In this document: positions 1-37,917 of the stretch, in pieces | Layout of the letters: each line of letters opens with the position of its first letter | How positions within the stretch are numbered: position 1 is the stretch's first letter | Virus record (IMG/VR): IMGVR_UViG_3300033143_001962 | Span: 62,001-126,000 of that record | Direction: 5' to 3' (one strand) | DNA: 64,000 nucleotides | The notes under the pieces: model-generated | The model's database searches: none | The model's input: the letters and a program-made list of their open reading frames with translations, nothing else | Told to the model about the DNA's origin: nothing | Program-made: the position numbers and the translations under genes

Positions 1-2
1 TC

Positions 3-128
3 AGAACAGACATTCCGCATAATATTATAATGGGTGACGTGCCTAGGCTGGCTGTTAGTGTACGCTTTAGTGAAGGTGAGTACACATGGGCAGAGTCCGT
101 AGAAAGAATGAAGGAGTACATAGTATGA
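3..128 (+). CDS. 3' end of a cupin/2OG-Fe(II)-like protein, truncated by the window edge; paralog of the next gene
   Basis: Frame from nt 3 reads RTDIPHNIIMGDVPRLAVSVRFSEGEYTWAESVERMKEYIV*, matching the C-terminus of 125..718 (RADIPHDVIMGDKQRFGFTIRFWKDYESWDDVVEQFK). Its TGA overlaps the next ATG (ATGA at 125-128). Not in the ORF track. Confidence 0.8.
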   Translation, partial: RTDIPHNIIMGDVPRLAVSVRFSEGEYTWAESVERMKEYIV

Positions 129-718
129 GTGAATGTATGCACAGAACAAACATAAGTTTTAAAGGCGCGCTATCCGAGTTAGGTGGAATAGAAATAAATC
201 GTATCAGGCGACTAGTTGACAAAAAAACATTCCATCATCAAAAGTTTATATTAGATAAAGAAAAGATATTTACAGATGAATGGATGCAGTACGTACATGA
301 TAAGTTAGGAATGACTCCTACTACTGCAATGGCATTTTGTCGTAACCCGCACGTACAATTAGGCGCAGCACATATAGATGGCGGCCGAGACCGTGAAATA
401 TTTATGGGTCTGAATTGGGTGCAAGGCGAAGACGATAGTGAAATGATATGGTACGACATGCCCGACGTACTCAACGATATGCTTGAAGATGAATATGTTA
501 AGTACTGGACGTTCCCAGAAGATGAATACGACTTAAAAGAAATACATAGAGAGTGTGTTGGCAATAGTGATAACTTAGCACTTGTACGCGCAGACATACC
601 GCATGATGTTATTATGGGAGACAAACAACGTTTCGGGTTTACAATACGTTTCTGGAAAGACTACGAAAGTTGGGATGATGTTGTAGAACAATTTAAGGAC
701 GTTATAGTTGAAGAGTAA
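125..718 (+). CDS. Cupin / 2OG-Fe(II) oxygenase-like protein
   Basis: HxD (AAHIDG), distal His (IPHDV) and R-x-x-x-T-I-R strand fit a DSBH facial triad. Start moved to ATG 125 because of the ATGA overlap with the upstream gene. Confidence 0.55.
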   Translation: MSECMHRTNISFKGALSELGGIEINRIRRLVDKKTFHHQKFILDKEKIFTDEWMQYVHDKLGMTPTTAMAFCRNPHVQLGAAHIDGGRDREIFMGLNWVQGEDDSEMIWYDMPDVLNDMLEDEYVKYWTFPEDEYDLKEIHRECVGNSDNLALVRADIPHDVIMGDKQRFGFTIRFWKDYESWDDVVEQFKDVIVEE

Positions 719-2078
719 ATTTTTAACAGATGCAGAAAACATGAAGGAAAAGTTGGATACAGTATCTCCTTCATTTTGTTTAGCAAAGTGGAAGCAAGTA
801 TCCTTGCACTTAACAAATGGCATGAATAACTCTTGCTACCATCCTCCATTGCATAAAATTAATGTAGACGATATAATAAAAGATCCAAGCGCACTACATA
901 ATACAGCAGAAAAAGCTATAGCCAGAAAACAAATGGTGAGCGGCGAGCGACCCTCTGAATGTAGCTACTGTTGGGCAATGGAGGATAACGGTGAGTTAAG
1001 TGACAGGCATTACAGAAGTGGAGAACCATGGGCAGCACAGGACTTTGATACAATAGTCGCAAACCCAGAAGCTTCTGTAACGCCATCGTATGTAGAGGTT
1101 AATTTTAACCACTCATGTAACTTAGCTTGCTCTTATTGCAGCCCACAATTTTCGAGTACGTGGGGGGTTGAAGCAAGAAAGTTCGGAGCTTACCCTACTT
1201 CAACTCCACATAACGATCCTGCTTATTTTGCAGGTAATCGTAAACCAATTCCTAATCGCGAATACAATCCATACGTAGAAGCATTTTGGAAATGGTGGCC
1301 CGAGCTTTACAAAGACTTAGTACATTTCCGCATGACAGGCGGCGAACCATTACAAGATAAAAATACTTACAAAGTCTTTGATTATGTTTTGGAAAATCCA
1401 AAACCTGATTTACATTTGAATGTAACTTCAAACCTGTCTGTAGATCAGAAGCTGTGGGACAAATATTTAGGGTACGTTAAGCAATTAACTACTGGCAAGA
1501 TTGAACACTTCATGCAGTACGTATCAGTAGACACATGGGGTGAACAAGCAGAGTACATACGGCACGGGTTAGACTTTGATTTACTTTGGAAACGAGTAGA
1601 CCAGTACTTGACAGAAGTGCCTGAGTACTGTAGTATTACATTTATAATTACTATGAATAACTTGTCGATATACAGTTTGGATAAGTTAATGGAAGGCATC
1701 TTAGAGTTGCGTAAGAAGCACAGTAAAACATATCAGCGTGTATGGTTTGATACTCCAGTCTTGCGTACACCAGAATGGCAGAGCTTACAAATTCTGCCAG
1801 AGTACTATGCAACTAAGTTGATGGATATAAAAGAATTCATGATAGACAACGCGGAGACAGCTGATGAGCTGTATCATGGATTCAAAGATTATGAAATACA
1901 ACGTATGAGCAGAGACATAGCTTGGATGAGACAAGGAACTGATAACGTGGAACAAAAGAAAGCGGACTTTTATCGCTTCTTTAACGAAGCAGACAAACGT
2001 CACGGCACTAACTTTGAAGAAACATTTCCAGAACTTACACACTGGTACCGCGCAGGAAGATACCTTGCTAACAAGTAA
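708..2078 (+). CDS. Radical SAM protein with N-terminal twitch/SPASM-like domain (RS1)
   Basis: CNLACSYC, MTGGEP; N-terminal FCLAKW..SCYH and CSYCW. Confidence 0.9.
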   Translation: MKSKFLTDAENMKEKLDTVSPSFCLAKWKQVSLHLTNGMNNSCYHPPLHKINVDDIIKDPSALHNTAEKAIARKQMVSGERPSECSYCWAMEDNGELSDRHYRSGEPWAAQDFDTIVANPEASVTPSYVEVNFNHSCNLACSYCSPQFSSTWGVEARKFGAYPTSTPHNDPAYFAGNRKPIPNREYNPYVEAFWKWWPELYKDLVHFRMTGGEPLQDKNTYKVFDYVLENPKPDLHLNVTSNLSVDQKLWDKYLGYVKQLTTGKIEHFMQYVSVDTWGEQAEYIRHGLDFDLLWKRVDQYLTEVPEYCSITFIITMNNLSIYSLDKLMEGILELRKKHSKTYQRVWFDTPVLRTPEWQSLQILPEYYATKLMDIKEFMIDNAETADELYHGFKDYEIQRMSRDIAWMRQGTDNVEQKKADFYRFFNEADKRHGTNFEETFPELTHWYRAGRYLANK

Positions 2079-3243
2079 AAACAAAGATTCATTCTGTCCT
2101 GGCCATTGGGATGATATTCAATTTGCTCCATCGCAGGGATATATGTACGGGTGCTGTAAAGCTAAACCTATCTTACTCTCGGATACTAAGGAGCTAGAAA
2201 AACGCAGGACTGATGCATTAAATGGAATTAAAAATCCAGCATGTAGTTATTGTTGGGATACAGAAGCAAAAGGTAATGACAGTTACCGCCATTCGAAATT
2301 AAGCCGCTGGCATGGGTCATTGGCACCACGCCATGTGACGCTAGTGGTGGGTAATTTATGTAATTTACAATGTACGTATTGTAATGAAAAGGCAAGTTCA
2401 AAATGGCAGACAGACAGAAAACAAAATGGTCAGATTGATATGCAGTTTGATACTAATGTATATTATGGTGGAGCAACTTGCGATAATAAAAATTCGCAAG
2501 TATATATAGACTTTTTTAATAAGCTGGATTCGATTTTCAAGTTAACTGTATCCGGTGGCGAGCCACTAATAGGTACCGATTTGTATGATATTTTATCTGG
2601 TTGTGATTTGACAGGAGTCAGACGTATACACATTGCATCTAATTTAAACTACCCTAATACTAGAACATTGGATAAGTTATTAGAGCTCCAACATACACAC
2701 AGAATAACTATTAATGCTAGTTTAGATACAGTTAATGCACCAATACAAGAATATTTACGCTTTGGTTTTAACTGGGAAACATTTAAAAGTAACTTAGATT
2801 TTTTATTAACAAGCACCACGGTGAATGTATCATTCGGTACACTAGTAACAGCACAGACAGTATTCGGGATAAATGACATGTACGAGTTTGTGTACGAGAT
2901 GAAACATAACTATCCTAATAGGATTAACTGGTTTGTGTCGACTTGCACACAGCCGTTAACACATACGTTCGATGCATTAACTGATACAGAGAAAGCTCGC
3001 GCATTAACAGAGACTTTGAAAGTGCAAGAAAAGATATCCAATGTACAACATTTAGATGCTAAAGAAAACAGAGTGGCAATGGAGTTAATTAATATCAATA
3101 CAGTAATTGCAGCATTACAAAATGCAACATTCAATGAAGAATTACGACAAGATCAACAACATTTCTTTAAGCAGTTTAATGAACGCAATGGGTTAACAAC
3201 TCCAGAAGAATTAAAATTTTTAATAGAAGATGAGATTAAATGA
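2065..3243 (+). CDS. Radical SAM protein with N-terminal twitch/SPASM-like domain (RS2)
   Basis: CNLQCTYC, VSGGEP; N-terminal FCPGHW..GCC and CSYCW. Start uncertain: TTG 2065 after AGGA is preferred to 2014. Confidence 0.85.
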   Translation: MLTSKNKDSFCPGHWDDIQFAPSQGYMYGCCKAKPILLSDTKELEKRRTDALNGIKNPACSYCWDTEAKGNDSYRHSKLSRWHGSLAPRHVTLVVGNLCNLQCTYCNEKASSKWQTDRKQNGQIDMQFDTNVYYGGATCDNKNSQVYIDFFNKLDSIFKLTVSGGEPLIGTDLYDILSGCDLTGVRRIHIASNLNYPNTRTLDKLLELQHTHRITINASLDTVNAPIQEYLRFGFNWETFKSNLDFLLTSTTVNVSFGTLVTAQTVFGINDMYEFVYEMKHNYPNRINWFVSTCTQPLTHTFDALTDTEKARALTETLKVQEKISNVQHLDAKENRVAMELININTVIAALQNATFNEELRQDQQHFFKQFNERNGLTTPEELKFLIEDEIK

Positions 3244-4595
3244 GTTTAAGAAAAGAAGGCAGAGAAACAGACAAAGAAGTACTAGACTATATCAATAGTT
3301 ATAGTAAGTCAATGTGTTTAGCTAAATGGTACAATGCTACTATATGGCTAGGCAGCGGCATGACTACTAGTTGTCATCACCCACCAGCACATAACATTCC
3401 AGTACACGAAGTAAAGTTTAATCCATCGGCATTGCATAACACTCGCGATAAAAAGTTAGATCGTTATATGATGCAAGAAGGAGTACGACCTAAAGGGTGT
3501 GAGTACTGTTGGAAAATAGAAGACATGGGCACTGATGCAATTAGTGATCGTGTGTATAAGTCTGTTATATATAAAGACAGAGACATGGTGTATGCAGCTA
3601 AGTCAGACTCAAAAGATAATATTAATCTTAAAACACTTGAGATTGCATTTGATAGAACGTGCAACCTTGCTTGTTCTTATTGTAACCCTGCATTTAGTTC
3701 GACCTGGGTAAGAGATATTAAACGCAACGGCCCGTACGAGAACTTAATAAGCGATGGTAGAGGACACTTTACACATACACACGATGCCGCGCAAATGTAT
3801 AAGCCGGACGAAGAAAACCCTTACGTAGAAGCATTCTTTAAATGGTGGGAAAGCGACTTGAAACATAGCTTACAAGAGCTACGACTGACCGGTGGCGAGC
3901 CACTAATGTCTCCGTATACATTCAGATTGTTTGATAAATTCATTGAAGACAAACCGGATATGCAGTTTGCTCTTAATAGTAATCTTTGTGTTAAGGATAG
4001 TATCATTACTAAGTTAATTGAAACAACCCATAGTATAGACAACTTTCAATTATACACAAGCTGTGAAGCAGTAGGTGACAAAGCAGAATACATACGCGAT
4101 GGGTTCAACTGGGATCAGTGGATGGGTAATATACATAAAATCTTAACGCTAGGAAAAGTAAACGGCTTCCATATGATGTGTACTGTTAATGCATTATGCT
4201 TAGATTCGTTACCTGGTTTCTTAGATCATATGATGAACTTAAAGAAACAGTACGGTAAAGATTATCCAACGTTTTCATTAAACATTTTACGCTTCCCATC
4301 GTTTCAGAGTCCGTTAGTACTGCCAGATGATTTGCGTACAGAGTTTAAAGATGATTTGCAAGTGTGGTTAGATAAGAATATTGATAGTCCATTGTTACAC
4401 CAAATGGAAATCAATCAAGTTAAGCGTTTAATAGATTACTTAGATGTAGTTAAAACGCCGCATGATGATAGTTTTGACTTGCCTACGTTGCGTCATGACT
4501 TTAAACAGTTTTATACGCAGTACGATGAACGTAGAAACAAATATTTTAATATAACGTTTCCTATAATTTCGGAGTGGTACGATGCCCTTAGTTAG
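3240..4595 (+). CDS. Radical SAM protein with N-terminal twitch/SPASM-like domain (RS3); closest to RS1
   Basis: CNLACSYC, LTGGEP; MCLAKW..SCHH, CEYCW; shares ENPYVEAF(F/W)KWW and GDKAEYIRDG/GEQAEYIRHG with RS1. Confidence 0.9.
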   Translation: MSLRKEGRETDKEVLDYINSYSKSMCLAKWYNATIWLGSGMTTSCHHPPAHNIPVHEVKFNPSALHNTRDKKLDRYMMQEGVRPKGCEYCWKIEDMGTDAISDRVYKSVIYKDRDMVYAAKSDSKDNINLKTLEIAFDRTCNLACSYCNPAFSSTWVRDIKRNGPYENLISDGRGHFTHTHDAAQMYKPDEENPYVEAFFKWWESDLKHSLQELRLTGGEPLMSPYTFRLFDKFIEDKPDMQFALNSNLCVKDSIITKLIETTHSIDNFQLYTSCEAVGDKAEYIRDGFNWDQWMGNIHKILTLGKVNGFHMMCTVNALCLDSLPGFLDHMMNLKKQYGKDYPTFSLNILRFPSFQSPLVLPDDLRTEFKDDLQVWLDKNIDSPLLHQMEINQVKRLIDYLDVVKTPHDDSFDLPTLRHDFKQFYTQYDERRNKYFNITFPIISEWYDALS

Positions 4596-4839
4596 TCCAA
4601 GTGTAACAGTTAGAGAAGTTGCCAGTTCGAATATAGTTGGCATACAACAAAAACGTTTTATTCCATCACTGCGCATAAACAATAAATGGACGTTAATTAT
4701 TTCTGATTATCATTACTGGATGAGCAATGAAGTTGATCTAGAAAATTCAGTAATTGAATTGAATGGTGTAAGGGAAGGAATGACAATAGAATTTGAAACA
4801 AAAGAAGAACGCACATGGTTCTTACTAAGGTGGCAATGA
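4582..4839 (+). CDS. Small protein of the 'F-x-x-x-x-D/E-A-x-x-F-x-L-x-W' family
   Basis: GGAG 7 nt upstream; ends IEFETKEERTWFLLRWQ like the 18.3-20.1 kb paralogs. Confidence 0.65.
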   Translation: MPLVSPSVTVREVASSNIVGIQQKRFIPSLRINNKWTLIISDYHYWMSNEVDLENSVIELNGVREGMTIEFETKEERTWFLLRWQ

Positions 4840-5594
4840 TGAGTACTCAAAGATACGAAACCAGGATTAGCCAGTTGATAGTAAGCGGCTGTAGTTTTAC
4901 ACACAACAATCATGATACCCATGTCGCTTGGCCTAATATACTCGAAGCATGGTCCGACATGCAACTAACAAATTTAGCTGTACCTGGTGCCGGCAATACA
5001 CATATAGCTAATAGTATTATCTTGCACTTAGAAAAGAATAAGCCTAATCCATCGGATACATTAGTAATGGTTATGTGGACCGGACCTGAACGTATTGATT
5101 GGATAACAGATAAAGAGAGTTCGAAATTTAAAGATGCCTATCCATTTACATACGATTACGATGATAACAATGAATTAGTACTTGGAGGCGCATGGTGGGG
5201 AAACAAGCCCAGGTCCGACGTTGAAAATTTAATCATTCAGTACTCGAAATATCAGAGCGACTCTAGTTTAGCATTAACCAGTTGGCTCGCTATGCAAAGC
5301 CTAACGAATTATCTCGAACAAAACGGATACGATTACATATATACTTCTATTGCAGACTTAGACGGTGCTGAAGATGCTAATAGGTGGATACAGTACACTA
5401 ACGAATTATCGGAAATTGGGCTATCTGTGGATAATCCACATTGGATACAACCATTCCTGTACGAACACGGAAAAACAAATAATGTATTAATGGACGATAA
5501 CTTTCATGTGCATTGGCAAGGTCACGAATCGTGGGTAACGGATGTGCTAGTGCCAAGATTACAACAGGCAGGGGTTATAACAAATGAGCTATGA
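4836..5594 (+). CDS. SGNH/GDSL-hydrolase-like protein
   Basis: SGCSFT block I, LAVPGAGN block II, C-terminal DNFH (DxxH). ATGA overlap places the start at 4836. Confidence 0.6.
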   Translation: MMSTQRYETRISQLIVSGCSFTHNNHDTHVAWPNILEAWSDMQLTNLAVPGAGNTHIANSIILHLEKNKPNPSDTLVMVMWTGPERIDWITDKESSKFKDAYPFTYDYDDNNELVLGGAWWGNKPRSDVENLIIQYSKYQSDSSLALTSWLAMQSLTNYLEQNGYDYIYTSIADLDGAEDANRWIQYTNELSEIGLSVDNPHWIQPFLYEHGKTNNVLMDDNFHVHWQGHESWVTDVLVPRLQQAGVITNEL

Positions 5595-6864
5595 TTATAA
5601 CAGTTGGGAACCTGTAAAAATATCCGCAGATGAATTAGACCAGTACGAAACTGAATTGCTACGTGATAGTAAAACATTTTGTATCTATCCGTGGATACAT
5701 TTACACGCATATCCTACAGGCGAAACGTATCCTTGTTGCCACGCTGACATGCAATTACCGGTTGGCAATGCAAGAGTCAATACGCTTAAAGACATGTGGA
5801 ATAGCGAAGGCATGAAACAAATTCGTCATAATATGATCGAAGGTGTTAAGTGCGGCGAGTGCGTAGGATGTTATGAACAAGAAGCAAGTGGGTTCTTTAG
5901 TGGACGGAAGAGTGCTAATAAGCATCACGGTCACCACATAGACTTAGTAGAAGAAACACATGCAGACGGGCATTTAGATAAGTTTAGTATGTCGTACTGG
6001 GATATAAGGTTTAGTAATTTGTGTAATCTTAGTTGTAGAAGCTGTGGACACATTTTTAGTAGTAGTTGGTATAAGGATCAAGTAAAGTTAGCCGGTCCCG
6101 ATTGGGGTGCAAACAATAGCGCATTGCAAATAGCAGGCCGCGGTAAAACAGACATGGTTGATCAACTTATGCAGCATATTGATAGTGTGGAACAAATATA
6201 TTTCGCAGGCGGTGAGCCACTTATGATGGAAGAACATTATAAGATTTTAGACGAATTAGAAAAAAGAGAAATGTTCCATGTCCGCTTAATTTACAATACT
6301 AATTTTACACAAATTAAACTTAAAGATAGAGAAGTCTTTGACTACTGGAAAAAGTTCGACTCAGTGAGTGTAGGCGCAAGCTTAGACGCAATGGGGCAAC
6401 GTGCAGAGTACATACGCAAAGGTACTGACTGGGCTGTAGTAGAAGCTAATCGTCGTAAGATGATAGAAGTATGTCCTAACGTAGACTTCTATATTAGTGC
6501 AACATTAAGCATTATGAATGCATTGCACATCGCAGACTTTCATAGGGCTTGGGTAGCTAAAGGATTAATTAACCCACAAGACTTTAACATTAACATATTG
6601 CAGGATCCGATGCATTACCGTATTGACATTGCTCAAGCAAAGTACAAAGACAAAATACGTACTAAGTTCCGCGAACACTTACTATGGCTAAAAGGTAAAG
6701 ATGACTTGAACAGAGCAAGCACAGGTTTTGAAAGTGCTATACAATTTATGGATGCAACAGATAACACAGATCAGATTACGTGGTTCTGGACACACATAAG
6801 ACAACTTGATCTGTTACGCAACGAAGACTGGCATGACTTTATTCCGGAGTTACAAGACTTATAA
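5584..6864 (+). CDS. Radical SAM protein with N-terminal twitch/SPASM-like domain (RS4)
   Basis: CNLSCRSC, FAGGEP; FCIYPW..PCCH, CVGCY. Confidence 0.9.
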   Translation: MSYDYNSWEPVKISADELDQYETELLRDSKTFCIYPWIHLHAYPTGETYPCCHADMQLPVGNARVNTLKDMWNSEGMKQIRHNMIEGVKCGECVGCYEQEASGFFSGRKSANKHHGHHIDLVEETHADGHLDKFSMSYWDIRFSNLCNLSCRSCGHIFSSSWYKDQVKLAGPDWGANNSALQIAGRGKTDMVDQLMQHIDSVEQIYFAGGEPLMMEEHYKILDELEKREMFHVRLIYNTNFTQIKLKDREVFDYWKKFDSVSVGASLDAMGQRAEYIRKGTDWAVVEANRRKMIEVCPNVDFYISATLSIMNALHIADFHRAWVAKGLINPQDFNINILQDPMHYRIDIAQAKYKDKIRTKFREHLLWLKGKDDLNRASTGFESAIQFMDATDNTDQITWFWTHIRQLDLLRNEDWHDFIPELQDL

Positions 6865-7094
6865 TGAGCAGATTTGAATTCAGACCGTTTACGCCAATGG
6901 ACACGTTCCAACCTGGGTTTACGCATTTAGTAAAAGTGTTCAACTGGCTTGATGCCAACGACATTAGTTACATAACCAGAGAGCAAATAGATAAAACAAA
7001 TTTCGAACCGTATACACAAATAGCAATGTCTAGTAGAAGTGCTACGCTATTTGCATTAAAGTGGAGTAATTTAATTAATGTCTTTGCCAAATAA
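6864..7094 (+). CDS. Small hypothetical protein, likely the same '..LFALKW' family
   Basis: Fills the gap between RS4 and RS5 with overlaps; ends SATLFALKWS. Confidence 0.55.
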   Translation: MSRFEFRPFTPMDTFQPGFTHLVKVFNWLDANDISYITREQIDKTNFEPYTQIAMSSRSATLFALKWSNLINVFAK

Positions 7095-9319: not shown

Positions 9320-9641
9320 ACTAACTGACAACCAACAAGAAGTATGGGATAGATTAAAACACACTGGAATTGACTCTGAAATCGCAGCTAGTCTACAACG
9401 CCGCCTACAATTTTTTACTGGCATGTCGAATAATGCAGCAACTCAGATTGAGGTAGAGCAAAGTCTGTGCGAATCACTAAATCATTATCTCGATAATCGA
9501 GAAATTTATGATTATACAGTCGTGTGCGACGCAGGTAACAACACCGTCCATGACGTTACTACTAATAGGTTAAATGTTGATGTATTTATTAAGCCTACTA
9601 GAGCAGCAGATATCATAAACATAAACTTGACGATAAAATAA
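9312..9641 (+). CDS. Stand-alone contractile tail sheath C-terminal-domain-like protein
   Basis: IYDYTVVCDAGNNTVHDVTTNRLNVDVFIKPTRAADIININL matches the T4 gp18-type C-terminal pattern (Y-x-Y-R-VVCD-x-x-NNT...F-I-x-P-x-R...I-x-L-N-F). GGAG 7 nt before ATG 9312. Confidence 0.65.
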   Translation: MHELTDNQQEVWDRLKHTGIDSEIAASLQRRLQFFTGMSNNAATQIEVEQSLCESLNHYLDNREIYDYTVVCDAGNNTVHDVTTNRLNVDVFIKPTRAADIININLTIK

Positions 9642-10966
9642 TGAATAAATTTTGTCTAGCACCATTCTTCCATACTTATATGTCACCACAGACAGAACGC
9701 CGCATGTGTTGTGCATCACGCGAACCAGCGCAGAACTTTAAACAGTACATAGATACTGATGAAGGAACAGGCGAGTACAATCCACTTACACTAGCAGAAC
9801 ACTGGAACAGTCCGCACATGATGTCAGTACGTAAACGTATGCTCGCAGGTGAAGAACTTCCAGAATGCGAAGTATGCAACGATAAGCTTTTAAATACAGA
9901 CGTCTATCGCAGCTACTTCCAGCACTTGTTTGAACATAAACGACAAGAAGCTATTGCTAAGACAGATGCAGACGGGTTTACAACATGTAATACAGTAAGT
10001 TGGGACTACAGATTTAGTAACTTGTGCAACTTCAAATGCCGTATGTGCGGAGACATGTTAAGCTCAGCGTGGGAAACTGAAGAACGCAATAACGATATGA
10101 TTAACTTCAATGATCCTAAAAACAATTGGATGCAACCTGAAGTTAGACAAAAAATTAGCAAGTTCCACGACTGGCAAGTACAAGAAGAATTCAGCGATGC
10201 AATCGAAGCACACTGCATGGAAGAGATATACTGGGTAGGTGGCGAACCTCTTATGATGGAAGAACACTGGCGCTTTATGTCACGCATAATTGAGCTAGGT
10301 GACGGTCCAGGACTGTACGCTCGATATAACACTAACTTATCCAGACTTAAGTACAAAGGTCTAGACTTGCGTACAATGTTGCCTAAGATACGTGACTGGC
10401 AAATTTGTGCAAGCATTGACGGAACAGGCGAAATTGGTGAGTACATACGTACTGGATTGGATTGGCCAATGTTCTTATCTAACTACCAAGAGATGCAGAC
10501 GATAGCAACGCACCCTAGACAAATGCGCTTAGACTTTACCCTTACACTACCTGGGTTATTCGAACTGAAAAATATGTTCAACTTAAGTAAAGACTTAAAT
10601 ACAATGATGCTTGCTAAAGTTACATTTGCATTCAGCCCAGACATTTTAATGTCACCGTTAGCATTGCCTAAACACATTTTACATAGAATTGTAAATGAGT
10701 TTTTAGACTATGCTGATAAAGAAGGCTACAATAACAATCAACAACCCCTAATAGATGTCTTGAAGAATCTACTTAGCAGACAAACCTTTAGAGAAGAGTG
10801 GGCTCCTGATTATATTGCAGGTGCAACAAAAGGCAAAGCACGAATATTAAAGCTTGAAGCAATTAGACCTGCTTCACTTACATTTGAAGACATACTTAGA
10901 AAGGATGATGAAGCACATGAGTGGTACACAGCCATTAGACACGATGGTAATAACATTACAGAATAG
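9641..10966 (+). CDS. Radical SAM protein with N-terminal twitch/SPASM-like domain (RS6)
   Basis: CNFKCRMC, WVGGEP; FCLAPF..MCCA, CEVCN. Confidence 0.9.
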   Translation: MNKFCLAPFFHTYMSPQTERRMCCASREPAQNFKQYIDTDEGTGEYNPLTLAEHWNSPHMMSVRKRMLAGEELPECEVCNDKLLNTDVYRSYFQHLFEHKRQEAIAKTDADGFTTCNTVSWDYRFSNLCNFKCRMCGDMLSSAWETEERNNDMINFNDPKNNWMQPEVRQKISKFHDWQVQEEFSDAIEAHCMEEIYWVGGEPLMMEEHWRFMSRIIELGDGPGLYARYNTNLSRLKYKGLDLRTMLPKIRDWQICASIDGTGEIGEYIRTGLDWPMFLSNYQEMQTIATHPRQMRLDFTLTLPGLFELKNMFNLSKDLNTMMLAKVTFAFSPDILMSPLALPKHILHRIVNEFLDYADKEGYNNNQQPLIDVLKNLLSRQTFREEWAPDYIAGATKGKARILKLEAIRPASLTFEDILRKDDEAHEWYTAIRHDGNNITE

Positions 10967-12002
10967 AGACACTGGTGATTTACTTCCAGTTTACATTGAT
11001 GTATTTAACGATGCATTAAGTACAAAGTGGTACGGCGCACTTAACGATATACTAGCAAAAGAATTACACTTAGAAAAGAACTATCAGTTCTTTGGTATTC
11101 CGCAGTACGAACGTAATGGTGATTACATCACTGATCAAATAAACGATTCAATACATGCAATAAATGATGCTAACTTAGGTTATCACATACACGATTGTTT
11201 TAGTATGGCAAACACTATACAGGACATCGATGGCGAAATAGGCGATAACCTCCCTGGTCGTAAACTAATACATCAACGTATGAATGATTTGCATAGATAT
11301 TTTGAAGACTTGCAGGGTACGTCCGGAAATATGTCTCCTTTTTATAATAAAGCAGATAAGTACACTCGCTGGCACATTAGGCAATTGAACTTGCTATGTC
11401 ACGAGTACGAAAGTTGGGTACTTAGTTACCGCAAACAAGAGTACGCTAAGGAATGGATGCGTCCGAGTCAGTTAATGTGCTTTTTAAATGCTCCACGCTT
11501 TGAATTGACAGCAGAAGATTACGAAAGTTTCGGTATCGAAACAATAGCTCGACCCTTAGGTGGTGTTTTTGTAGGTGTTAACAAAGCAGTAGGAAAACAT
11601 CACTGGGAAGTATTCCAAGATGAAGGCGGACGTAGCATAGATGAATTAACTACTTCAACATTGCGTTCACAGACAGAAGCAGCAGGAGACTTTGATATAG
11701 AATGGGCAAACAATCCAGGTGAATACGAGTTTATGAAAAAAGAATTAGCTGATTTTAAACAGTGGCTAATAAACAACAACTTTGATCCAGCCGATAAATC
11801 ACTAACAATTGGTCATCCACAAGTTGCTCAAGTTAACCTAAACCGTAGCTTTGGCACTGACGATTATGCTATAATATGGAAGCAGCTATTTAATCATTTA
11901 GATGTGTTCTCAATTGAAACCGAGGACAATAGAGTTGAGTTCGAATACAATTGGGATGATCTGGATTACAGAGAACAGCAAGTAGAGGCACTTAGTAAAT
12001 GA
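10944..12002 (+). CDS. Hypothetical protein, paralog of 29682..30527
   Basis: Shared LH(R/N)(Y/I)FE, LNL-x-x-H-x-x-E and G-x-V-(F/Y)...VGK motifs. Start moved to ATG 10944. Confidence 0.75.
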   Translation: MVITLQNRDTGDLLPVYIDVFNDALSTKWYGALNDILAKELHLEKNYQFFGIPQYERNGDYITDQINDSIHAINDANLGYHIHDCFSMANTIQDIDGEIGDNLPGRKLIHQRMNDLHRYFEDLQGTSGNMSPFYNKADKYTRWHIRQLNLLCHEYESWVLSYRKQEYAKEWMRPSQLMCFLNAPRFELTAEDYESFGIETIARPLGGVFVGVNKAVGKHHWEVFQDEGGRSIDELTTSTLRSQTEAAGDFDIEWANNPGEYEFMKKELADFKQWLINNNFDPADKSLTIGHPQVAQVNLNRSFGTDDYAIIWKQLFNHLDVFSIETEDNRVEFEYNWDDLDYREQQVEALSK

Positions 12003-12100
12003 AATGGCTTAAAAAGATGTGGAACAAAATTAAATTAGAACGACGTTATCGCAAAAAGCTTAAAGAGCTTAAGAAACGCGATCCGTTTATCTATAAATGA
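11999..12100 (+). CDS. 33-aa highly basic peptide MKWLKKMWNKIKLERRYRKKLKELKKRDPFIYK
   Basis: Translated by hand; ATGA overlaps at both ends. Below the ORF-track cut-off. Confidence 0.75.
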   Translation: MKWLKKMWNKIKLERRYRKKLKELKKRDPFIYK

Positions 12101-12276
12101 CACACGCACAAGAAACAAACCCGTGCGTTGGCTGCATGATTATCGATGAATGTACTGGTTACTGTACTGGTTGCTTTCGATCAGAATCTGAAATAGGATC
12201 TTGGGATAGCTTTACTGACATTACCCGCAATTCAATATTAAGTGTACTAGGAGTACGAAGAAGAGACAATGGCTAA
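12097..12276 (+). CDS. DUF1289-like Cys-rich small protein (59 aa)
   Basis: MTHAQETNPCVGCMIIDECTGYCTGCFRSESEIGSWDSFTDITRNSIL fits the PC-x-G...C-x-GC-x-R-x-x-x-EI-x-x-W pattern; overlaps both neighbours. Confidence 0.7.
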   Translation: MTHAQETNPCVGCMIIDECTGYCTGCFRSESEIGSWDSFTDITRNSILSVLGVRRRDNG

Positions 12277-13777
12277 TATATTAGGAATAAGTGCAGGCTT
12301 CCACGACGCAGGTCTGGCAGTAGTTGATAGTGAAACAGGACTAATTAAATTTGCAGGACACAGCGAACGCTTCAGTAAGAAGAAGCATGACGCTAAAATA
12401 TGTCCTGAGATACTTGAGTACGCAAAAGGGCTAGGCCCAATTAGTACTATAGCGTACTACGAGAATCACTTGAAGAAGAATTTACGTATGTGGCGCGCAG
12501 GACAGAAGATAGAAAACTTTAACTGGACTCTGAAGAGTGAACTTAAACAACACTTGCCTGACAATGAAGTACTTCTTGAAGGTGCAAACCTTAAAAGCTA
12601 CGACCACCACAAGTCACATGCCGCAGCAGGATTTCAAACAAGCCCGTACGATGCAGCGACAGTAGTGGTAATAGATGCTATAGGTGAGTTTGATACTATT
12701 AGTATTTGGAATGCAAAGTACGATAAGAATGGCTTTGCAAAGTACAAGAAGGTATGGAGTCAAGGATATCCTCATAGCATTGGATTATTTTACAGTGCAG
12801 TAACAGGCAGCGTAGGCTTACGTCCAATGGACGAGGAATACATTTTAATGGGCATGGCTGCATACGGTAGCCCGCGCCAAAGTATTAAAAAGATACGTAG
12901 AGAATTAATCACATCAGTAAAGCCACCTAAGTTTAAAGAAAACTTGCACATAGGTATAGAACAAGATTCGTTAGAAGACTCACGCATAGACAAGTACGAT
13001 GTAGCAGCAGGCGCACAATTCCTAGTAGAAGAAATGATTGAAGGTATCATGGAAAAGTCTAAGCAGTACGATAACACAGGCAACTTAGTGTACATGGGTG
13101 GAGTGGCATTAAATTGTAGTGCTAATAAGTACCTCGGACAGTACTACGATAATATTTGGATTATGCCTAACCCAGGCGATGCAGGCAGTAGCTTAGGCGC
13201 AGCCGCATTAGCTTACGGTAAGAAAGTATTGTTCGGTGATGCATTCTTAGGGTATAATATTATAAGTGATGGCTATCCCGTAGACGCAATAATTAAAGAA
13301 TTACTTAGCACTAAAATTGCAGGTGTTGCTAACGGTAAAGCAGAGTTCGGACCACGCGCACTAGGTAATAGAAGCTTACTTGCAGACCCTAGAGGTAATG
13401 ATATTAAAGATAAAGTAAACGAAATTAAACAACGTCAAAAGTTCCGCCCGTTTGCGCCTGTGATATTAGAGGAACATGTGCATGACTACTTTGTAATGCC
13501 GGACGGATTCGAAACAAGTCCGTACATGCAAGTCACCGCTAAGTGCAAAGCACCTAAAGAGTTCCCTGCTATTGTACACCACGATGGTACAAGTAGAGTT
13601 CAAACTGTTCCTAAAGACAGAACAGGTATTAGAAAGCTATTGGAAAAGTGGTACGAGGAAACAGGATGTCCTATGTTACTTAATACTTCGTTGAATGTTA
13701 GGGGCGAACCTATAGTAAACGATGTGCATGACGCACATAGATTTGAACAGCATTACGGAGTAAAGGTATTTTCTTAA
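12269..13777 (+). CDS. O-carbamoyltransferase (NodU/CmcH/TobZ family)
   Basis: Kae1-like N-domain (FHDAG, HHKSHAAAG, VIDAIGE) and YrdC-like C-domain (EFGPRALGNRSLLADPR, FRPFAP, HHDGTSRVQTV, LLNTSLNVRGEP). Confidence 0.95.
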   Translation: MANILGISAGFHDAGLAVVDSETGLIKFAGHSERFSKKKHDAKICPEILEYAKGLGPISTIAYYENHLKKNLRMWRAGQKIENFNWTLKSELKQHLPDNEVLLEGANLKSYDHHKSHAAAGFQTSPYDAATVVVIDAIGEFDTISIWNAKYDKNGFAKYKKVWSQGYPHSIGLFYSAVTGSVGLRPMDEEYILMGMAAYGSPRQSIKKIRRELITSVKPPKFKENLHIGIEQDSLEDSRIDKYDVAAGAQFLVEEMIEGIMEKSKQYDNTGNLVYMGGVALNCSANKYLGQYYDNIWIMPNPGDAGSSLGAAALAYGKKVLFGDAFLGYNIISDGYPVDAIIKELLSTKIAGVANGKAEFGPRALGNRSLLADPRGNDIKDKVNEIKQRQKFRPFAPVILEEHVHDYFVMPDGFETSPYMQVTAKCKAPKEFPAIVHHDGTSRVQTVPKDRTGIRKLLEKWYEETGCPMLLNTSLNVRGEPIVNDVHDAHRFEQHYGVKVFS

Positions 13778-15397
13778 ATGTTCGATATATTTACATTGAC
13801 ATCTTATCCGGGTGCTACTAAGGTAAATAGCATCAATGAAGCGCAAGAACTCACAAAGACTAGGTACTGCTGGATACTTGATGATCGCAATGATTACAGT
13901 AACTTTGATTTCCTATGGGAGCCGGCACCCTGGGAGGCTAATCAGTCGCACGTCTGGCCTAGCCAACATCAAGAGAACGGCGGTACTAGATTAGTACCTA
14001 AGCAAAAGTACACAGATACAAATTACCACACTGAAGAAATACCCAGAACACGCTTTCCTAAAATTGTACACTTAGATCACGGCAATGGCTTTGACCCATG
14101 GCTCGCACCTACAACCGGAATGTACTTGCTAGAACGATCACGTTTTATTAACGACTACTTAGGTACATTGAAACGTGTAGTACAGAAGAATATTGATTGT
14201 GGTCACTTATGGGTGATAAGCTCAGTTTGTAGTTATAGAGATTTTGACTTTACGTGGCATCCTAGTGAATGGCAACAAGATATGTTGCATGTGTTTCCTA
14301 GTAATGAACAAAAGTTTGGTGACACATTCTTAATTAACGTAGAAGACTTTTTAAAACAAAGCAAAGCCTTAGAACTGCTCGAATGGTACGACACTATTTG
14401 TTTCCAAGATACTATTGTACACCGCGCAACTCCATCTATGTACTTACATCAACACGATAATCAAGTTGACGCAATGAAGTCAGCTATTTTTCAGAAGATA
14501 GAAGACCCAAGTGAATTCAACGATCCTGTTACATTGTTTACAACTTCAATTGAAGGGTTCGACGACGGAACTATTCCTACAATTAACTTATGGCGCCCCG
14601 AGACAAGAGCTATTACTCCGTTAGACAAAGGTGCCAAGCGTGTACTTGTGCCGAGAGAAGCATTAACTGAAGTACATGATCAGTTATACGATTACAAGTA
14701 CATAGATAAAAGTCATAATGACGATTACAAGTCTTCCCCAATTGATATTGTGTTTATGAGTAACGGCGAATCATGTGCGCAAGAGAACTACGATCGATTA
14801 TGCGAAGTTGCTGACGGTTACGAGATACACTGGGTTAAAGATGTTGAAGGGCGTATTGCGTCAGCACGTGAAGCAGCCAGAGTTTCAAACACTGATTGGT
14901 TCTTTTCTGTCAATGCTAAACTTAAAGTAGATAGAGACTTTGATTGGGACTGGCAACCCGATTGTATGCAAGCCGCAAAGCATTATATATTTTATGCATA
15001 TAATCCATTAACTGATGATACGTACGGACACATGGCAACTATAGCCTGGAATAAGAATTTAGTTAACACTGATACTGACTGGGGCTTAGACTTTACAATG
15101 AGTCACGAGCACGAAGTTATTCCTGTACTCTCGGGAGAAGCTATATACGCAGACGAACCTTGGGCAGCATGGAGAACAGCATTCCGTGAAGTTATAAAGT
15201 TACAGTTAGATGATGGTATGGAATCGTCTTTGCACTTAAAGAAGTGGCTCGCTGCGAATGATGAATGGACAGCTAAAGGTGCTAATGATGCAGTTGATTT
15301 CTTTAAGACTTCAAACGGTGATATGGATAAGTTGTTGTTAAGCTTTGACTGGGAATGGTTAGCTAAGTACTATTATATTAAATATATAACGTACTAG
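13778..15397 (+). CDS. Glycosyltransferase-like (GT-A) protein with three internal repeats
   Basis: DIVFMSNGE..AQENY, WRTAFREVIKL; repeated FDF-x-W-x-P...HV(W/F)PS unit. Confidence 0.55.
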   Translation: MFDIFTLTSYPGATKVNSINEAQELTKTRYCWILDDRNDYSNFDFLWEPAPWEANQSHVWPSQHQENGGTRLVPKQKYTDTNYHTEEIPRTRFPKIVHLDHGNGFDPWLAPTTGMYLLERSRFINDYLGTLKRVVQKNIDCGHLWVISSVCSYRDFDFTWHPSEWQQDMLHVFPSNEQKFGDTFLINVEDFLKQSKALELLEWYDTICFQDTIVHRATPSMYLHQHDNQVDAMKSAIFQKIEDPSEFNDPVTLFTTSIEGFDDGTIPTINLWRPETRAITPLDKGAKRVLVPREALTEVHDQLYDYKYIDKSHNDDYKSSPIDIVFMSNGESCAQENYDRLCEVADGYEIHWVKDVEGRIASAREAARVSNTDWFFSVNAKLKVDRDFDWDWQPDCMQAAKHYIFYAYNPLTDDTYGHMATIAWNKNLVNTDTDWGLDFTMSHEHEVIPVLSGEAIYADEPWAAWRTAFREVIKLQLDDGMESSLHLKKWLAANDEWTAKGANDAVDFFKTSNGDMDKLLLSFDWEWLAKYYYIKYITY

Positions 15398-15418
15398 TAA
15401 CAATACGCTGGTTCTTTA

Positions 15419-15453
15419 GACTTACAAGCCCTATTTGCTGTAAGTCATTGAAT
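15419..15453. terminator. Imperfect hairpin at the convergence of two operons, overlapping an IHF-like site
   Basis: GACTTACA(A)GC...GCTGTAAGTC inverted repeat (15419-15446); TAAGTCATTGAAT (15441-15453) is one mismatch from the other sites. Confidence 0.4.
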
Positions 15454-15507
15454 AATAAGTAGTTGTTGTTTTGAGTATGTTATAATATAGCTATAAGAAT
15501 CAATGAC

Positions 15508-17962: not shown

Positions 17963-17966
17963 AATC

Positions 17967-30564: not shown

Positions 30565-30641
30565 TGGTGCCGATTGTCGGATTCGAACTGACCACCTACG
30601 CATTACAAGTGCGTTGCTCTGCCAAAATGAGCTAAACCGGC
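30565..30641 (-). tRNA. trnT: tRNA-Thr(UGU) with encoded CCA
   Basis: GCCGGTT-TA-GCTC-ATTTTGGCA-GAGC-A-ACGCA-CTTGTAA-TGCGT-AGGTG-GTCAG-TTCGAAT-CCGAC-AATCGGC-ACCA; 77 nt; one A-C mismatch in the T stem. Confidence 0.95.
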
Positions 30642-37844: not shown

Positions 37845-37917
37845 TATATTAAACTGTATATGTAAATTGTAATACTAATTGTAATTATAACGAATGCAAA
37901 AAGCTTAACTACTGTTC

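What the first reader, a model, noticed from the sequence alone, without database searches (positions are those of the whole stretch)
1..15397. Phage tailoring operon: six twitch-first radical SAM paralogs with a carbamoyltransferase, glycosyltransferases, SGNH and cupins
Seen: one translationally coupled + strand operon holds six CxxxCxxC enzymes. Each puts a Cys-rich module (C-x-x-x-W/F...C-C/x-H...CxxC) BEFORE the radical SAM core, the reverse of the usual rSAM-then-SPASM order. The operon also has an O-carbamoyltransferase, two GT-like proteins, an SGNH-like protein and two DSBH paralogs. Established: BtrN-type twitch rSAMs oxidise sugars or cyclitols, and TobZ/NodU enzymes carbamoylate sugars. 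Inference: a multi-step pathway that builds or decorates a glycan, on the virion or on hypermodified DNA, with each paralog acting at a different position. I know of no characterised pathway with this architecture.
Basis: partly seen in the sequence, partly recalled or inferred. Interest (0 to 1): 0.88.

Follow-up and report, generated by a model that had tools for sequence, protein, structure and literature searches.

The report
Jumbo-phage glycan-tailoring radical SAM operon
An uncultured giant phage carries, right after its tail-fibre genes, a tightly packed operon of six related iron-sulfur "radical" enzymes plus sugar-transferring and carbamoyl-adding enzymes that most likely makes an unusually decorated sugar structure. 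The enzyme family is already catalogued, but I found no report of its chemistry.

Summary
The core observation holds. Window 86-15397 is one co-directional operon in which 15 of 16 gene junctions overlap or abut. It has six radical SAM paralogs, each with a 4-Cys twitch/SPASM-like module before the CxxxCxxC core, and a NodU/TobZ-type carbamoyltransferase. The architecture is not unknown: all six match NCBIfam NF033640 ("twitch domain-containing radical SAM protein"), though rSAM2 falls just under the cutoff. That family has about 6,600 clusters at 50% identity. I found no paper on it.

The operon starts upstream of the window, directly after virion and tail-fibre genes and glycosyltransferase-like genes. 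A seventh paralog sits at 28436-29701.

In 50 related IMG/VR loci recruited by one unrelated operon gene:
- rSAMs occur in 50 of 50 loci (4-8 per locus);
- the carbamoyltransferase occurs in 49 of 50;
- the 539-aa GT-A-like protein occurs in 42 of 50.

Five rSAM lineages are distinct orthologous clades kept in fixed order. Bacterial sister lineages lie in glycosyltransferase and NDP-sugar (O-antigen-like) clusters.

Best reading: a glycan or NDP-sugar tailoring pathway, probably decorating virion fibre proteins. No result shows the chemistry or the acceptor. The SGNH and "two cupin" calls are not supported. The second GT call (p357) rests on a motif only. DNA hypermodification is unlikely.

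The parts
86..718 (+). 210-aa protein. It is one of four ~200-aa paralogs; the other three lie upstream of the window. HxD...H...R residues are invariant. A Fe(II)/2OG-oxygenase-like role is a guess. Accessory gene, absent from relatives.
   Evidence: paralogy, E 1e-20 to 1e-35. No Pfam, PHROG or PDB hit. No hit in L002-L006, L013, L014 or the 50 IMG/VR loci.
741..2078 (+). rSAM1, an N-terminal-twitch radical SAM enzyme (ORF opens at 708; called start 741).
   Evidence: NF033640 325 bits. Invariant Cys motifs. Orthologous clade 100/99 that includes Ralstonia phage RsoM2USA ORF349 nearby. Orthologue in 42 of 50 loci.
2065..3243 (+). rSAM2, an N-twitch radical SAM enzyme and the least conserved paralog.
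   Evidence: NF033640 163.7 bits, just under the 170 cutoff; Pfam Radical_SAM 33.4 bits. Orthologue at >=45% identity in only 2 loci.
3240..4595 (+). rSAM3, an N-twitch radical SAM enzyme, 34% identical to rSAM1.
   Evidence: NF033640 306 bits. Orthologue in 50 loci. Clade 100/99.
4582..4839 (+). 85-aa ORF of unknown role. It is conserved only in the closest relatives.
   Evidence: 43-44% identity in L002 and L004. Found in 1 of 50 loci.
4815..5594 (+). 259-aa protein. Accessory gene.
   Evidence: No family or PDB hit. Orthologues in L013 and L014 only. One Lipase_GDSL_2 hit at E 0.041 in a mixed set that included its orthologues; the hitting member is not identified.
5584..6864 (+). rSAM4, an N-twitch radical SAM enzyme and the best family match.
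   Evidence: NF033640 403 bits; Pfam SPASM at residues 33-96 (40 bits), then Radical_SAM at 143-295. More than 7,700 90%-identity clusters at E<=1e-5. Acidobacteriota and Cytophagales genes are sister to its clade.
6864..7094 (+). 76-aa ORF, not conserved.
7078..8265 (+). rSAM5, an N-twitch radical SAM enzyme.
   Evidence: NF033640 332 bits; Pfam SPASM at residues 9-78 (32.5 bits) and Radical_SAM 41.8 bits. Orthologue in 46 loci.
8246..9319 (+). 357-aa member of a multi-paralog family with a conserved ET...F.TEKTFKPI..PF...G..G.L motif. The motif resembles fucosyltransferase/exostosin-type glycosyltransferases from memory only.
   Evidence: Up to 5 paralogs in L013. No PDB or Pfam hit. Present in 13 of 50 loci.
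9306..9641 (+). 111-aa orphan copy of a tail-sheath C-terminal domain.
   Evidence: phrog_23 1e-11; Pfam Phage_sheath_1C 7e-5. 28% identical to the C-terminus of the RsoM2USA sheath gene. Not conserved.
9641..10966 (+). rSAM6, an N-twitch radical SAM enzyme.
   Evidence: NF033640 293 bits. Orthologue in 50 loci, always directly upstream of p382. Alphaproteobacteria and Bacteroidales genes are sister to its clade.
10917..12002 (+). p382 (361 aa as called). It is a core gene of unknown function with a phage-restricted fold and many invariant His, Asp, Glu and Arg residues.
   Evidence: 5,740 clusters and no Pfam domain. AF2 pLDDT 84, pTM 0.85. No PDB neighbour, best E 0.35. BFVD matches are only uncharacterised phage proteins, best 6e-21. 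Found in 299 IMG/VR contigs.
12097..12276 (+). 59-aa Cys-rich DUF1289 protein. A metal or Fe-S binding helper role is possible but is inference.
   Evidence: Pfam DUF1289 1.9e-10, 40.9 bits. 40% identical copy in L002.
12269..13777 (+). O-carbamoyltransferase of the NodU/TobZ/CmcH family.
   Evidence: Carbam_trans_C 8.8e-51 and Carbam_trans_N 6.2e-35. phrog_1601 5e-98. HHxxH and NTSLN motifs are visible in the translation. Present in 49 of 50 loci.
13778..15397 (+). p539, a multi-domain GT-A-like protein and the last gene of the operon.
   Evidence: AF2 pLDDT 89. Foldseek PDB top hits are K4CP chondroitin polymerase (4e-5), PmHS2, ArnC, GtrB and SunS. About 5,000 clusters and no Pfam domain. 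Present in 42 of 50 loci.
28436..29701 (+). rSAM7, a seventh N-twitch radical SAM paralog outside the finding's coordinates.
   Evidence: Shares all invariant Cys and 30% identity with rSAM1. phrog_14086. Forms its own clade with L035_12681.

Best explanation
The operon is a phage-encoded pathway that makes and decorates an unusual sugar structure.

SHOWN
- A tightly packed operon holds six intact N-terminal-twitch radical SAM enzymes. Each has the SAM-cluster CxxxCxxC, a GGE motif and four conserved Cys, enough for one auxiliary [4Fe-4S] cluster.
- It also holds a NodU/TobZ-type carbamoyltransferase, a multi-domain GT-A-like protein, a DUF1289 Cys-rich protein and a conserved protein with a phage-only fold.
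- It lies directly downstream of virion and tail-fibre genes, two GT8-like genes and a GT-A-like gene.
- The core, in the order rSAM1-3-4-5-6, p382, carbamoyltransferase, p539, is conserved in hundreds of jumbo-phage contigs.

INFERRED
- The GT8-like and GT-A-like enzymes transfer host-derived sugars.
- Each rSAM lineage uses a 5'-deoxyadenosyl radical to abstract a hydrogen from a different sugar or position. This could happen on NDP-sugars or on the growing glycan. The N-terminal auxiliary cluster would take up the electron or bind the substrate, giving oxidation, epimerisation, deoxygenation or C-C/C-methyl chemistry.
- The carbamoyltransferase caps a hydroxyl using carbamoyl phosphate and ATP.
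- The most likely acceptor is a virion surface protein encoded just upstream: the Ser/Thr-rich fibre-like proteins or the 4,342-aa structural protein.

My split: sugar/glycan pathway about 0.65; virion proteins as the acceptor about 0.35 overall.
For: - Enzyme identities.
- Tight operon.
- Upstream synteny is: giant virion protein (phrog_701), a fibre with a Peptidase_G2 chaperone domain (phrog_19602), a Ser/Thr-rich 306-aa protein, two GT8-like proteins (their profile hits only glycogenins in the PDB, E 6e-4), then a GT-A-like 307-aa protein. L002-L006 and L013/L014 repeat the parts of this order that their flanks cover; the fibre genes themselves are seen in L002, L006 and L013.
- Cultured Ralstonia phage RsoM2USA has a minimal cassette of two GT8-like genes, two GT-A-like genes and one rSAM1-type gene (38% identity, 9e-94). 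It lies next to the sheath and a 2,541-aa protein, both assigned to virion gel bands analysed by LC-MS/MS (PMC8504454).
- Co-occurrence: 50/50 rSAM, 49/50 carbamoyltransferase, 42/50 p539.
- Five strongly supported orthologous rSAM clades.
- Bacterial relatives sit in sugar loci:
  - Acidobacteriota: four rSAM/SPASM genes interleaved with GT2, two GT4 genes, a GT9-methyltransferase fusion and YdjC.
  - Alphaproteobacteria: rSAM between an Acyl_transf_3-SGNH protein, an NDP-hexose C-methyltransferase, a dehydratase/epimerase, a sugar nucleotidyltransferase and GT2.
  - Plasmids: Methylomagnum (GT2/GT4, UbiA, ABC exporter), Azospirillum (three rSAMs, a carbamoyltransferase, FkbM methyltransferases, nucleotide-sugar enzymes) and Manganitrophus (GT4s, kinases).
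Against: - I found no characterised member of NF033640, so the sugar substrate rests on gene neighbourhood only.
- The held part of the phage genome shows no nucleotide-sugar synthesis genes.
- The C-terminal GT-A-like domain of p539 lacks an acidic DxD (consensus).
- The GT8-like call is weak (E 6e-4). The p357-family call rests on a motif only.
- The closest solved structure by sequence is a peptide-modifying RS-SPASM enzyme.
- Placement next to fibre genes is positional evidence and does not show that virions are glycosylated.
- p382, the most conserved partner, has no assignable function.
Confidence: 0.55

Rival explanations
1. The same enzymes remodel a host envelope polysaccharide (LPS, O-antigen or capsule) during infection. 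This could block superinfection or change cell-surface properties. The virion would not be the target.
For: Bacterial relatives sit in O-antigen/LPS-like clusters with ABC exporters and GT9. Phage genes for O-antigen modification are a known kind (general knowledge). PHROGs files the carbamoyltransferase under 'moron, auxiliary metabolic gene and host takeover'.
Against: The operon holds no flippase, polymerase, exporter or membrane-anchored transferase. It is in fixed synteny with tail-fibre and virion genes, including in the lytic phage RsoM2USA. The GT8-like profile's only PDB relatives are the protein-glycosylating glycogenins.
Confidence: 0.15
2. The rSAM paralogs act on protein rather than sugar. 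They would install radical cross-links or other side-chain modifications in the virion fibre or giant structural proteins, or in a small peptide, in the manner of RiPP RS-SPASM maturases. The glycosyltransferases would act separately.
For: SPASM/twitch rSAMs are best known as peptide maturases (general knowledge). The best PDB hit of the paralog profile is the cyclopropylglycine synthase TvgB, 8VPO. Small ORFs sit between the rSAMs. Large structural proteins are encoded just upstream.
Against: No RiPP recognition element or PqqD-like domain was detected. The small ORFs are not conserved: s85 in 1 of 50 loci, s76 and s111 in none. The 8VPO match covers only the generic rSAM core. Bacterial sister genes sit among NDP-sugar and glycosyltransferase genes, not next to precursor peptides.
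Confidence: 0.12
3. The operon hypermodifies phage DNA, for example by glycosylating and carbamoylating a modified base. The HxD...H proteins would act as TET/JBP-like base oxidases.
For: Phage DNA hypermodification clusters can combine oxygenases, glycosyltransferases and radical SAM enzymes (general knowledge). A thymidylate-synthase-family gene lies next to the operon.
Against: The ThyA-like gene is on the other strand. It scores 2e-100 against the thymidylate synthase model and is followed by DHFR, as expected for ordinary dTMP synthesis. The HxD...H paralogs are absent from all relatives that keep the core and gave no Pfam hit of any kind, so none to a TET/JBP model. No DNA methyltransferase, hydroxymethylase, base kinase or DNA-binding domain was found in the operon. 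The operon sits in the tail-fibre module.
Confidence: 0.06
4. The operon makes a diffusible small molecule, such as an aminoglycoside-like or nucleoside-like compound tailored by rSAMs and a TobZ-like carbamoyltransferase.
For: BtrN, AprD4 and TobZ-type enzymes tailor aminoglycosides, and rSAM plus carbamoyltransferase pairs occur in nucleoside antibiotic pathways (general knowledge). The blasticidin decarboxylase gave a weak profile hit at E 0.007.
Against: No cyclitol synthase, aminotransferase, NRPS/PKS or exporter is present. BtrN was not retrieved. The synteny is with virion genes, and the enzymes present include ones resembling polymer- or protein-directed GT-A/GT8 transferases.
Confidence: 0.05

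Closest known systems
NCBIfam NF033640, N_Twi_rSAM ('twitch domain-containing radical SAM protein')
   Same: All six operon enzymes align to the model from profile position 1-2 over most or all of its 398 positions. The Cys-rich twitch module comes first and the rSAM core second. A Methylomagnum plasmid gene annotated with this family name by RefSeq sits in a glycosyltransferase cluster.
   Different: The family is a name without a known reaction. Four full-text searches found no paper on it. Here it occurs as 5-8 fixed, deeply diverged paralogs in one phage operon. rSAM2 is just under the family cutoff.
Sugar-tailoring radical SAM enzymes with an auxiliary cluster (BtrN; anSME as the SPASM prototype; MoaA as a twitch example)
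   Same: Both have a radical SAM core plus one Cys-ligated auxiliary [4Fe-4S]-type module. A sugar substrate is plausible from context.
   Different: In those enzymes the auxiliary domain is C-terminal. The paralog profile did not retrieve BtrN or anSME from the PDB; MoaA, viperin and TvgB matched only in the core. Homology to BtrN is therefore not shown.
NodU / NolO / TobZ / CmcH O-carbamoyltransferases
   Same: Both Pfam domains score far above threshold. The HHxxH and NTS(L/F)N motifs are present.
   Different: The acceptor is unknown. The gene is fixed next to p382 and p539 in a phage operon rather than in a Nod-factor or antibiotic cluster.
Virus-encoded virion glycosylation (Mimivirus fibrils, chlorovirus capsid glycans, glycosylated mycobacteriophage virions)
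   Same: The viral genome encodes its own glycosyltransferases and sugar-tailoring enzymes next to or for structural proteins. This comparison rests on general knowledge.
   Different: To my knowledge none of those systems uses arrays of radical SAM enzymes or a carbamoyltransferase. Virion glycosylation has not been demonstrated for this phage group.
Bacterial O-antigen / NDP-sugar clusters carrying N-twitch rSAM genes (Acidobacteriota L104, Alphaproteobacteria L105, Azospirillum plasmid L009)
   Same: They combine the same enzyme family with GT2/GT4/GT9 genes, acyltransferases, methyltransferases and, in Azospirillum, a carbamoyltransferase. The bacterial genes are sister to the phage rSAM4 and rSAM6 clades.
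   Different: Each bacterial locus has 1-4 rSAMs together with NDP-sugar synthesis and export genes, which the phage operon lacks. The bacterial loci have no p382 or p539.

Membership tests
Radical SAM superfamily | CxxxCxxC motif that ligates the SAM-binding [4Fe-4S] cluster | tested here: met
   Invariant C137, C141 and C144 (rSAM1 numbering) in all seven paralogs.
Radical SAM superfamily | Match to the Pfam Radical_SAM model, and a GGE SAM-binding motif | tested here: met
   PF04055 hits all six (E 1.7e-10 to 2e-3). Two are above the gathering score and four below it. GGEP is invariant.
SPASM/twitch auxiliary-cluster domain | Cys-rich domain matching the SPASM model | tested here: met
   PF13186 matches residues 33-96 of rSAM4 (40.3 bits) and 9-78 of rSAM5 (32.5 bits); the cutoff is 21.5. 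rSAM6 scores 15.9, below the cutoff. rSAM1-3 are covered only through NF033640.
SPASM/twitch auxiliary-cluster domain | Number of conserved Cys: 7-8 for full SPASM (two clusters), 3-4 for twitch (one cluster) | tested here: met
   Four invariant N-terminal Cys fit twitch, not full SPASM. Actual Fe-S content cannot be tested here.
NF033640 N_Twi_rSAM | Full-length score at or above the curated cutoff (170 bits) | tested here: met
   325, 306, 403, 332 and 293 bits for rSAM1, 3, 4, 5 and 6. rSAM2 scores 163.7, just below. rSAM7 was not scanned against NCBIfam.
BtrN-type twitch dehydrogenases | Detectable homology to BtrN, and a C-terminal twitch domain | tested here: not met
   The profile of seven paralogs did not retrieve BtrN at E<=1. 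The auxiliary module is N-terminal.
NodU/TobZ/CmcH carbamoyltransferases | Kae1-like N-terminal and YrdC-like C-terminal domains, both present | tested here: met
   Carbam_trans_N 121.7 bits and Carbam_trans_C 172.3 bits; cutoffs 24 and 27.
GT-A fold glycosyltransferases (p539) | GT-A fold | tested here: met
   Foldseek PDB top 50 hits are nearly all GT-A transferases (probability up to 1.0, best E 4e-5). Whole-chain TM is only about 0.2 because the protein has several domains.
GT-A fold glycosyltransferases (p539) | Acidic DxD metal/nucleotide-sugar motif | tested here: inconclusive
   I read no conserved DxD in the alignment consensus at the positions where I expected one. The single-domain paralog upstream keeps D-G-D.
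GT8 (glycogenin/LgtC-like), genes upstream of the window | Sequence similarity to GT8, and a DxD motif | tested here: inconclusive
   The profile of 11 sequences hits only glycogenins in the PDB, but at E 6e-4 to 3e-2. The second Asp of the D-x-D is invariant. No Pfam hit.
SGNH/GDSL hydrolases (4815-5594) | Match to an SGNH/GDSL model | tested here: not met
   No hit for the window protein. One Lipase_GDSL_2 hit at E 0.041 in a mixed 37-protein set, with the hitting member not identified.
Cupin/DSBH Fe(II)/2OG oxygenases (86-718 and upstream paralogs) | DSBH fold or family match, and a 2-His-1-carboxylate triad | tested here: inconclusive
   Invariant H, D (as HxD), H and R residues fit the triad. 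There is no Pfam, PHROG or PDB match, and no structure was predicted.
RiPP RS-SPASM maturases | RRE/PqqD-like recognition domain and an adjacent conserved precursor peptide | tested here: not met
   No such domain was found. The small ORFs in the operon are not conserved across relatives.

The most novel reading that the evidence does not exclude
The N-terminal-twitch radical SAM family carries out sugar or glycoprotein chemistry that has not yet been described. Under this reading, a widespread clade of aquatic and soil jumbo phages uses 5-8 such enzymes, a carbamoyltransferase and a phage-only-fold enzyme (p382) to build a hypermodified glycan on its tail fibres or giant surface protein. That would be a virion 'glycan coat' pathway with no characterised counterpart.
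Probability: 0.3. Interest if true: 0.85.

Novelty: new variant of a known kind. Interest (0 to 1): 0.62.

Why it matters
The family NF033640 has thousands of members (6,590 representatives at E<=1e-30), and I found no known reaction for it. This operon gives it a conserved genetic context: glycosyltransferase-like genes, a carbamoyltransferase and fibre genes. It also points to cultured carriers, Ralstonia phage RsoM2USA and Vibrio phage K566, so the chemistry becomes directly testable. If the product decorates virions, many abundant uncultured jumbo phages would carry a radical-enzyme-built glycan on their host-recognition apparatus. That would bear on adsorption, host range and how virions are recognised. 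If the enzymes act on NDP-sugars, they add a new branch of radical sugar biosynthesis shared with bacterial O-antigen clusters.

Tried and rejected
- Megablast of the operon against 50,697 phage records found no match.
- An alignment of the seven paralogs was too divergent to seed a collection scan.
- Pfam, PHROGs and NCBIfam gave nothing for 86-718, 4582-4839, 4815-5594, 6864-7094, 8246-9319, p382 or p539.
- PDB sequence and profile searches for p539, p382, p259, p357, the HxD...H family and the p357 family found nothing meaningful.
- Scanning 37 accessory proteins and orthologues against Pfam gave only DUF6071 (2 members) and single weak hits.
- Foldseek of p382 against the PDB gave no neighbour; the faint JmjC hits at E about 1 were rejected.
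- Four literature searches for N-terminal twitch/SPASM enzymes, rSAM in polysaccharide loci, and jumbo-phage rSAM/carbamoyltransferase operons found nothing relevant.
- The promoter and terminator scan showed no excess over shuffles.
- I considered that the processive GT2 at 39918-41249 (NodC-like) supplies the substrate for the NodU-like enzyme. This is not supported: a close-relative scan found the GT2 in only one other contig.
- The roughly 120-aa N-terminal extension seen in 550-aa versions of rSAM4 has no similarity to anything in the operon and may be a merged gene call.
- DNA hypermodification and RiPP readings were considered and ranked low (see rivals).
- Exact-sequence look-ups failed for three proteins.

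Full report
WHAT IS THERE

Window 86-15397 is a run of + strand genes. With the starts used by the public gene calls, 15 of 16 junctions overlap or abut (-50 to 0 nt) and one has a 22-nt gap. Terminator-like sites are no more frequent than in shuffled sequence.

Six genes encode radical SAM proteins: 741-2078, 2065-3243, 3240-4595, 5584-6864, 7078-8265 and 9641-10966. All six align, starting at profile position 1-2, to NCBIfam NF033640, 'twitch domain-containing radical SAM protein'. E-values run from 5e-48 to 1e-120. Five exceed the 170-bit cutoff and rSAM2 scores 163.7.

Pfam places a SPASM domain at the N-terminus of rSAM4 (residues 33-96) and rSAM5 (residues 9-78), both above threshold. 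The rSAM6 hit is below threshold. In each case the Radical_SAM core follows downstream. An alignment that includes a seventh paralog at 28436-29701 shows four invariant N-terminal Cys, the invariant CxxxCxxC, and GGEP.

The carbamoyltransferase at 12269-13777 has both NodU/TobZ-family domains (9e-51 and 6e-35) and matches phrog_1601 (5e-98). A 59-aa DUF1289 Cys-rich protein sits just before it.

THE OTHER GENES

- p539 (13778-15397) has no Pfam domain and about 5,000 metagenomic relatives. Its model is confident (pLDDT 89). Its PDB neighbours are GT-A glycosyltransferases: K4CP, PmHS2, ArnC, GtrB and SunS, with a best E of 4e-5. I read no conserved acidic DxD in the family consensus.
- p382 (10917-12002) is the best-conserved non-rSAM gene. 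Its model is confident (pLDDT 84, pTM 0.85). It has no PDB neighbour and matches only uncharacterised phage proteins in BFVD.
- The 'SGNH' protein at 4815-5594 has no family or structural support.
- The second 'GT' at 8246-9319 has no family or structural support either. It belongs to a multi-paralog family with a conserved TEK-type motif.
- Only one 'cupin' candidate (86-718) lies in the window. It has three paralogs upstream of the window, with invariant HxD...H...R residues but no HMM or PDB match.
- ORF 9306-9641 is an orphan tail-sheath C-terminal domain.

CONTEXT

The window is part of IMG/VR contig UViG_3300033143_001962, 249,797 bp. It carries phage genes throughout. The operon begins upstream of the window. 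In order, the upstream genes are:

1. A 4,342-aa protein that hits virion structural PHROGs.
2. A 497-aa fibre-like protein with a Peptidase_G2 chaperone domain.
3. A Ser/Thr-rich 306-aa protein.
4. Two GT8-like paralogs. Their joint profile hits only glycogenins in the PDB, at E 6e-4.
5. A GT-A-like 307-aa protein that keeps a D-G-D motif.
6. In this phage only: four HxD...H paralogs, a hexapeptide acyltransferase and a p357-family protein.

Relatives L002-L006, L013 and L014 keep the order fibre genes, GT8-like pair, GT-A-like gene, rSAMs as far as their flanks reach. They lack the HxD...H and acyltransferase genes.

Cultured Ralstonia jumbo phage RsoM2USA has a minimal version: two GT8-like genes, two GT-A-like genes and one rSAM1-type gene (38% identity, 9e-94). 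It lies directly after its sheath gene and a 2,541-aa protein, both assigned to virion gel bands analysed by LC-MS/MS (PMC8504454). Vibrio phage K566 has at least five distant paralogs.

CONSERVATION

A profile of p382 recovered 299 IMG/VR contigs. Fifty of the retrieved loci have full 10-kb flanks. Among those 50:

| Feature | Count |
|---|---|
| rSAM genes present (4-8 per locus) | 50 loci |
| Carbamoyltransferase present | 49 loci |
| p539 present | 42 loci |
| rSAM3 orthologue at >=45% identity | 50 genes |
| rSAM4 orthologue at >=45% identity | 51 genes |
| rSAM6 orthologue at >=45% identity | 50 genes |
| rSAM5 orthologue at >=45% identity | 46 genes |
| rSAM1 orthologue at >=45% identity | 42 genes |
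| rSAM2 orthologue at >=45% identity | 2 genes |

A maximum-likelihood tree places each of rSAM1, 3, 4, 5 and 6 in its own strongly supported clade, separated by long branches. Bacterial genes are sister to the rSAM4 and rSAM6 clades. The paralogs are therefore old and individually retained, which argues for different roles.

The family is large. The seven-paralog profile finds 6,590 representatives (50%-identity clusters) at E<=1e-30. rSAM4 alone has more than 7,700 90%-identity clusters.

WHAT THE FAMILY DOES ELSEWHERE

- An Acidobacteriota chromosome has four rSAM/SPASM genes interleaved with GT2, two GT4 genes, a GT9-methyltransferase fusion and YdjC.
- An alphaproteobacterial contig has the rSAM between an Acyl_transf_3-SGNH acyltransferase, an NDP-hexose C-methyltransferase, a dehydratase/epimerase, a sugar nucleotidyltransferase and GT2.
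- Three plasmid loci show the same theme. The Azospirillum locus has three rSAMs, a carbamoyltransferase and FkbM methyltransferases.
- Pooled neighbours of four chromosomal loci include GT2, Acyl_transf_3, methyltransferases and an epimerase.

This gene-neighbourhood evidence is consistent across phyla and is the main support for a sugar substrate.

MECHANISM

Shown: the enzyme set, its intact motifs, its order, its conservation and its position.

Inferred: the glycosyltransferase-like proteins assemble a glycan from host sugars. Each rSAM lineage performs a radical hydrogen abstraction on a different sugar or position, on NDP-sugars or on the glycan, with the N-terminal cluster as electron sink or substrate ligand. 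The carbamoyltransferase caps a hydroxyl. The acceptor is most likely a virion fibre or surface protein encoded upstream.

I put about 0.65 on a sugar or glycan pathway and about 0.35 on virion proteins as the acceptor. The rivals are host-envelope remodelling (0.15), direct radical modification of virion proteins or peptides (0.12), DNA hypermodification (0.06) and a small molecule (0.05).

- The DNA reading is weakened by a canonical-looking ThyA plus DHFR on the opposite strand. The oxygenase-like genes are also absent from all relatives.
- The peptide reading is weakened by the lack of a recognition domain and of conserved small ORFs. Its only support is a core-only match to TvgB, 8VPO.

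COMPARISON WITH WHAT IS KNOWN

The twitch-first order is not new as an architecture. It defines NF033640. I found no paper on it in four full-text searches, and no solved structure matches beyond the generic rSAM core. 'BtrN-type' is not supported.

What is new is the conserved phage operon: five to eight deeply diverged N-twitch rSAMs with a carbamoyltransferase, a phage-only-fold protein and GT-A/GT8-like genes, inside the tail-fibre module of a widespread jumbo-phage clade. I rate it a new variant of a known kind (virus-encoded glycan tailoring), with interest 0.62. Its value is that it gives a large orphan radical SAM family a testable context and cultured model phages.

Noticed in passing
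window 28436-29701 (+): A seventh N-twitch radical SAM paralog. It is the lone + strand gene among - strand genes and is 30% identical to rSAM1. It forms its own clade with a gene in IMG/VR locus L035.
   Followed up: partly
window 9306-9641 (+): An orphan 111-aa copy of a tail-sheath C-terminal domain sits inside the enzyme operon. It is 28% identical to the sheath C-terminus of RsoM2USA and is absent from relatives. It may be a recombination remnant or a small accessory protein.
   Followed up: partly
window 37068-41249 (-): A PAS-GGDEF diguanylate cyclase (37918-38784) lies beside a metallophosphatase. About 1 kb further on is a 443-aa processive GT2 with chitin-synthase/NodC-like hits (39918-41249). 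This could be a phage-encoded c-di-GMP and polysaccharide-synthase pair. A close-relative scan found the GT2 in only one other viral contig.
   Followed up: partly
window 48372-53101 (-): An NAD set: NAMPT (48372-49808), quinolinate synthase NadA (50406-51305) and an NMNAT-Nudix fusion (52001-53101).
   Followed up: no
window 15508-16995 (-): A thymidylate synthase of 342 aa, with about 75 residues more than the Pfam model, is immediately followed by DHFR. The pair converges on the end of the operon.
   Followed up: no
window 30565-30641 (-) and 35001-35870 (-): A single tRNA-Thr(TGT) and a polynucleotide kinase/phosphatase (PNKP).
   Followed up: no
L013 and L014 (GTDB MAG 'Haliscomenobacter sp. 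EUL_031', contigs of 183 kb and 148 kb): One bacterial MAG holds two different copies of the whole operon (61-64% identity to rSAM4). These are either two mis-binned jumbo phages or a hint that the host is in Bacteroidota.
   Followed up: no
L016 (Bacteriovoracaceae UBA6144 MAG contig, 84 kb), about 6040-18000: Eight N-twitch rSAM paralogs lie almost in a row, with no detectable carbamoyltransferase, p382, p539 or GT8-like genes.
   Followed up: partly
representative proteins P0361-P0369 and others: The top hits to the paralog profile are 790-1,203-aa proteins with two or three matched stretches. These are natural fusions of adjacent paralogs or merged gene calls.
   Followed up: no
L011 1-2811 (contig upstream of the window): The C-terminal end of a 4,342-aa virion-structural-type protein has weak CBM_5_12, PA14 and PLAT-like hits. 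A counterpart of 4,863 aa (FG-GAP, faint) occurs in L006, and one of 2,541 aa in RsoM2USA.
   Followed up: partly
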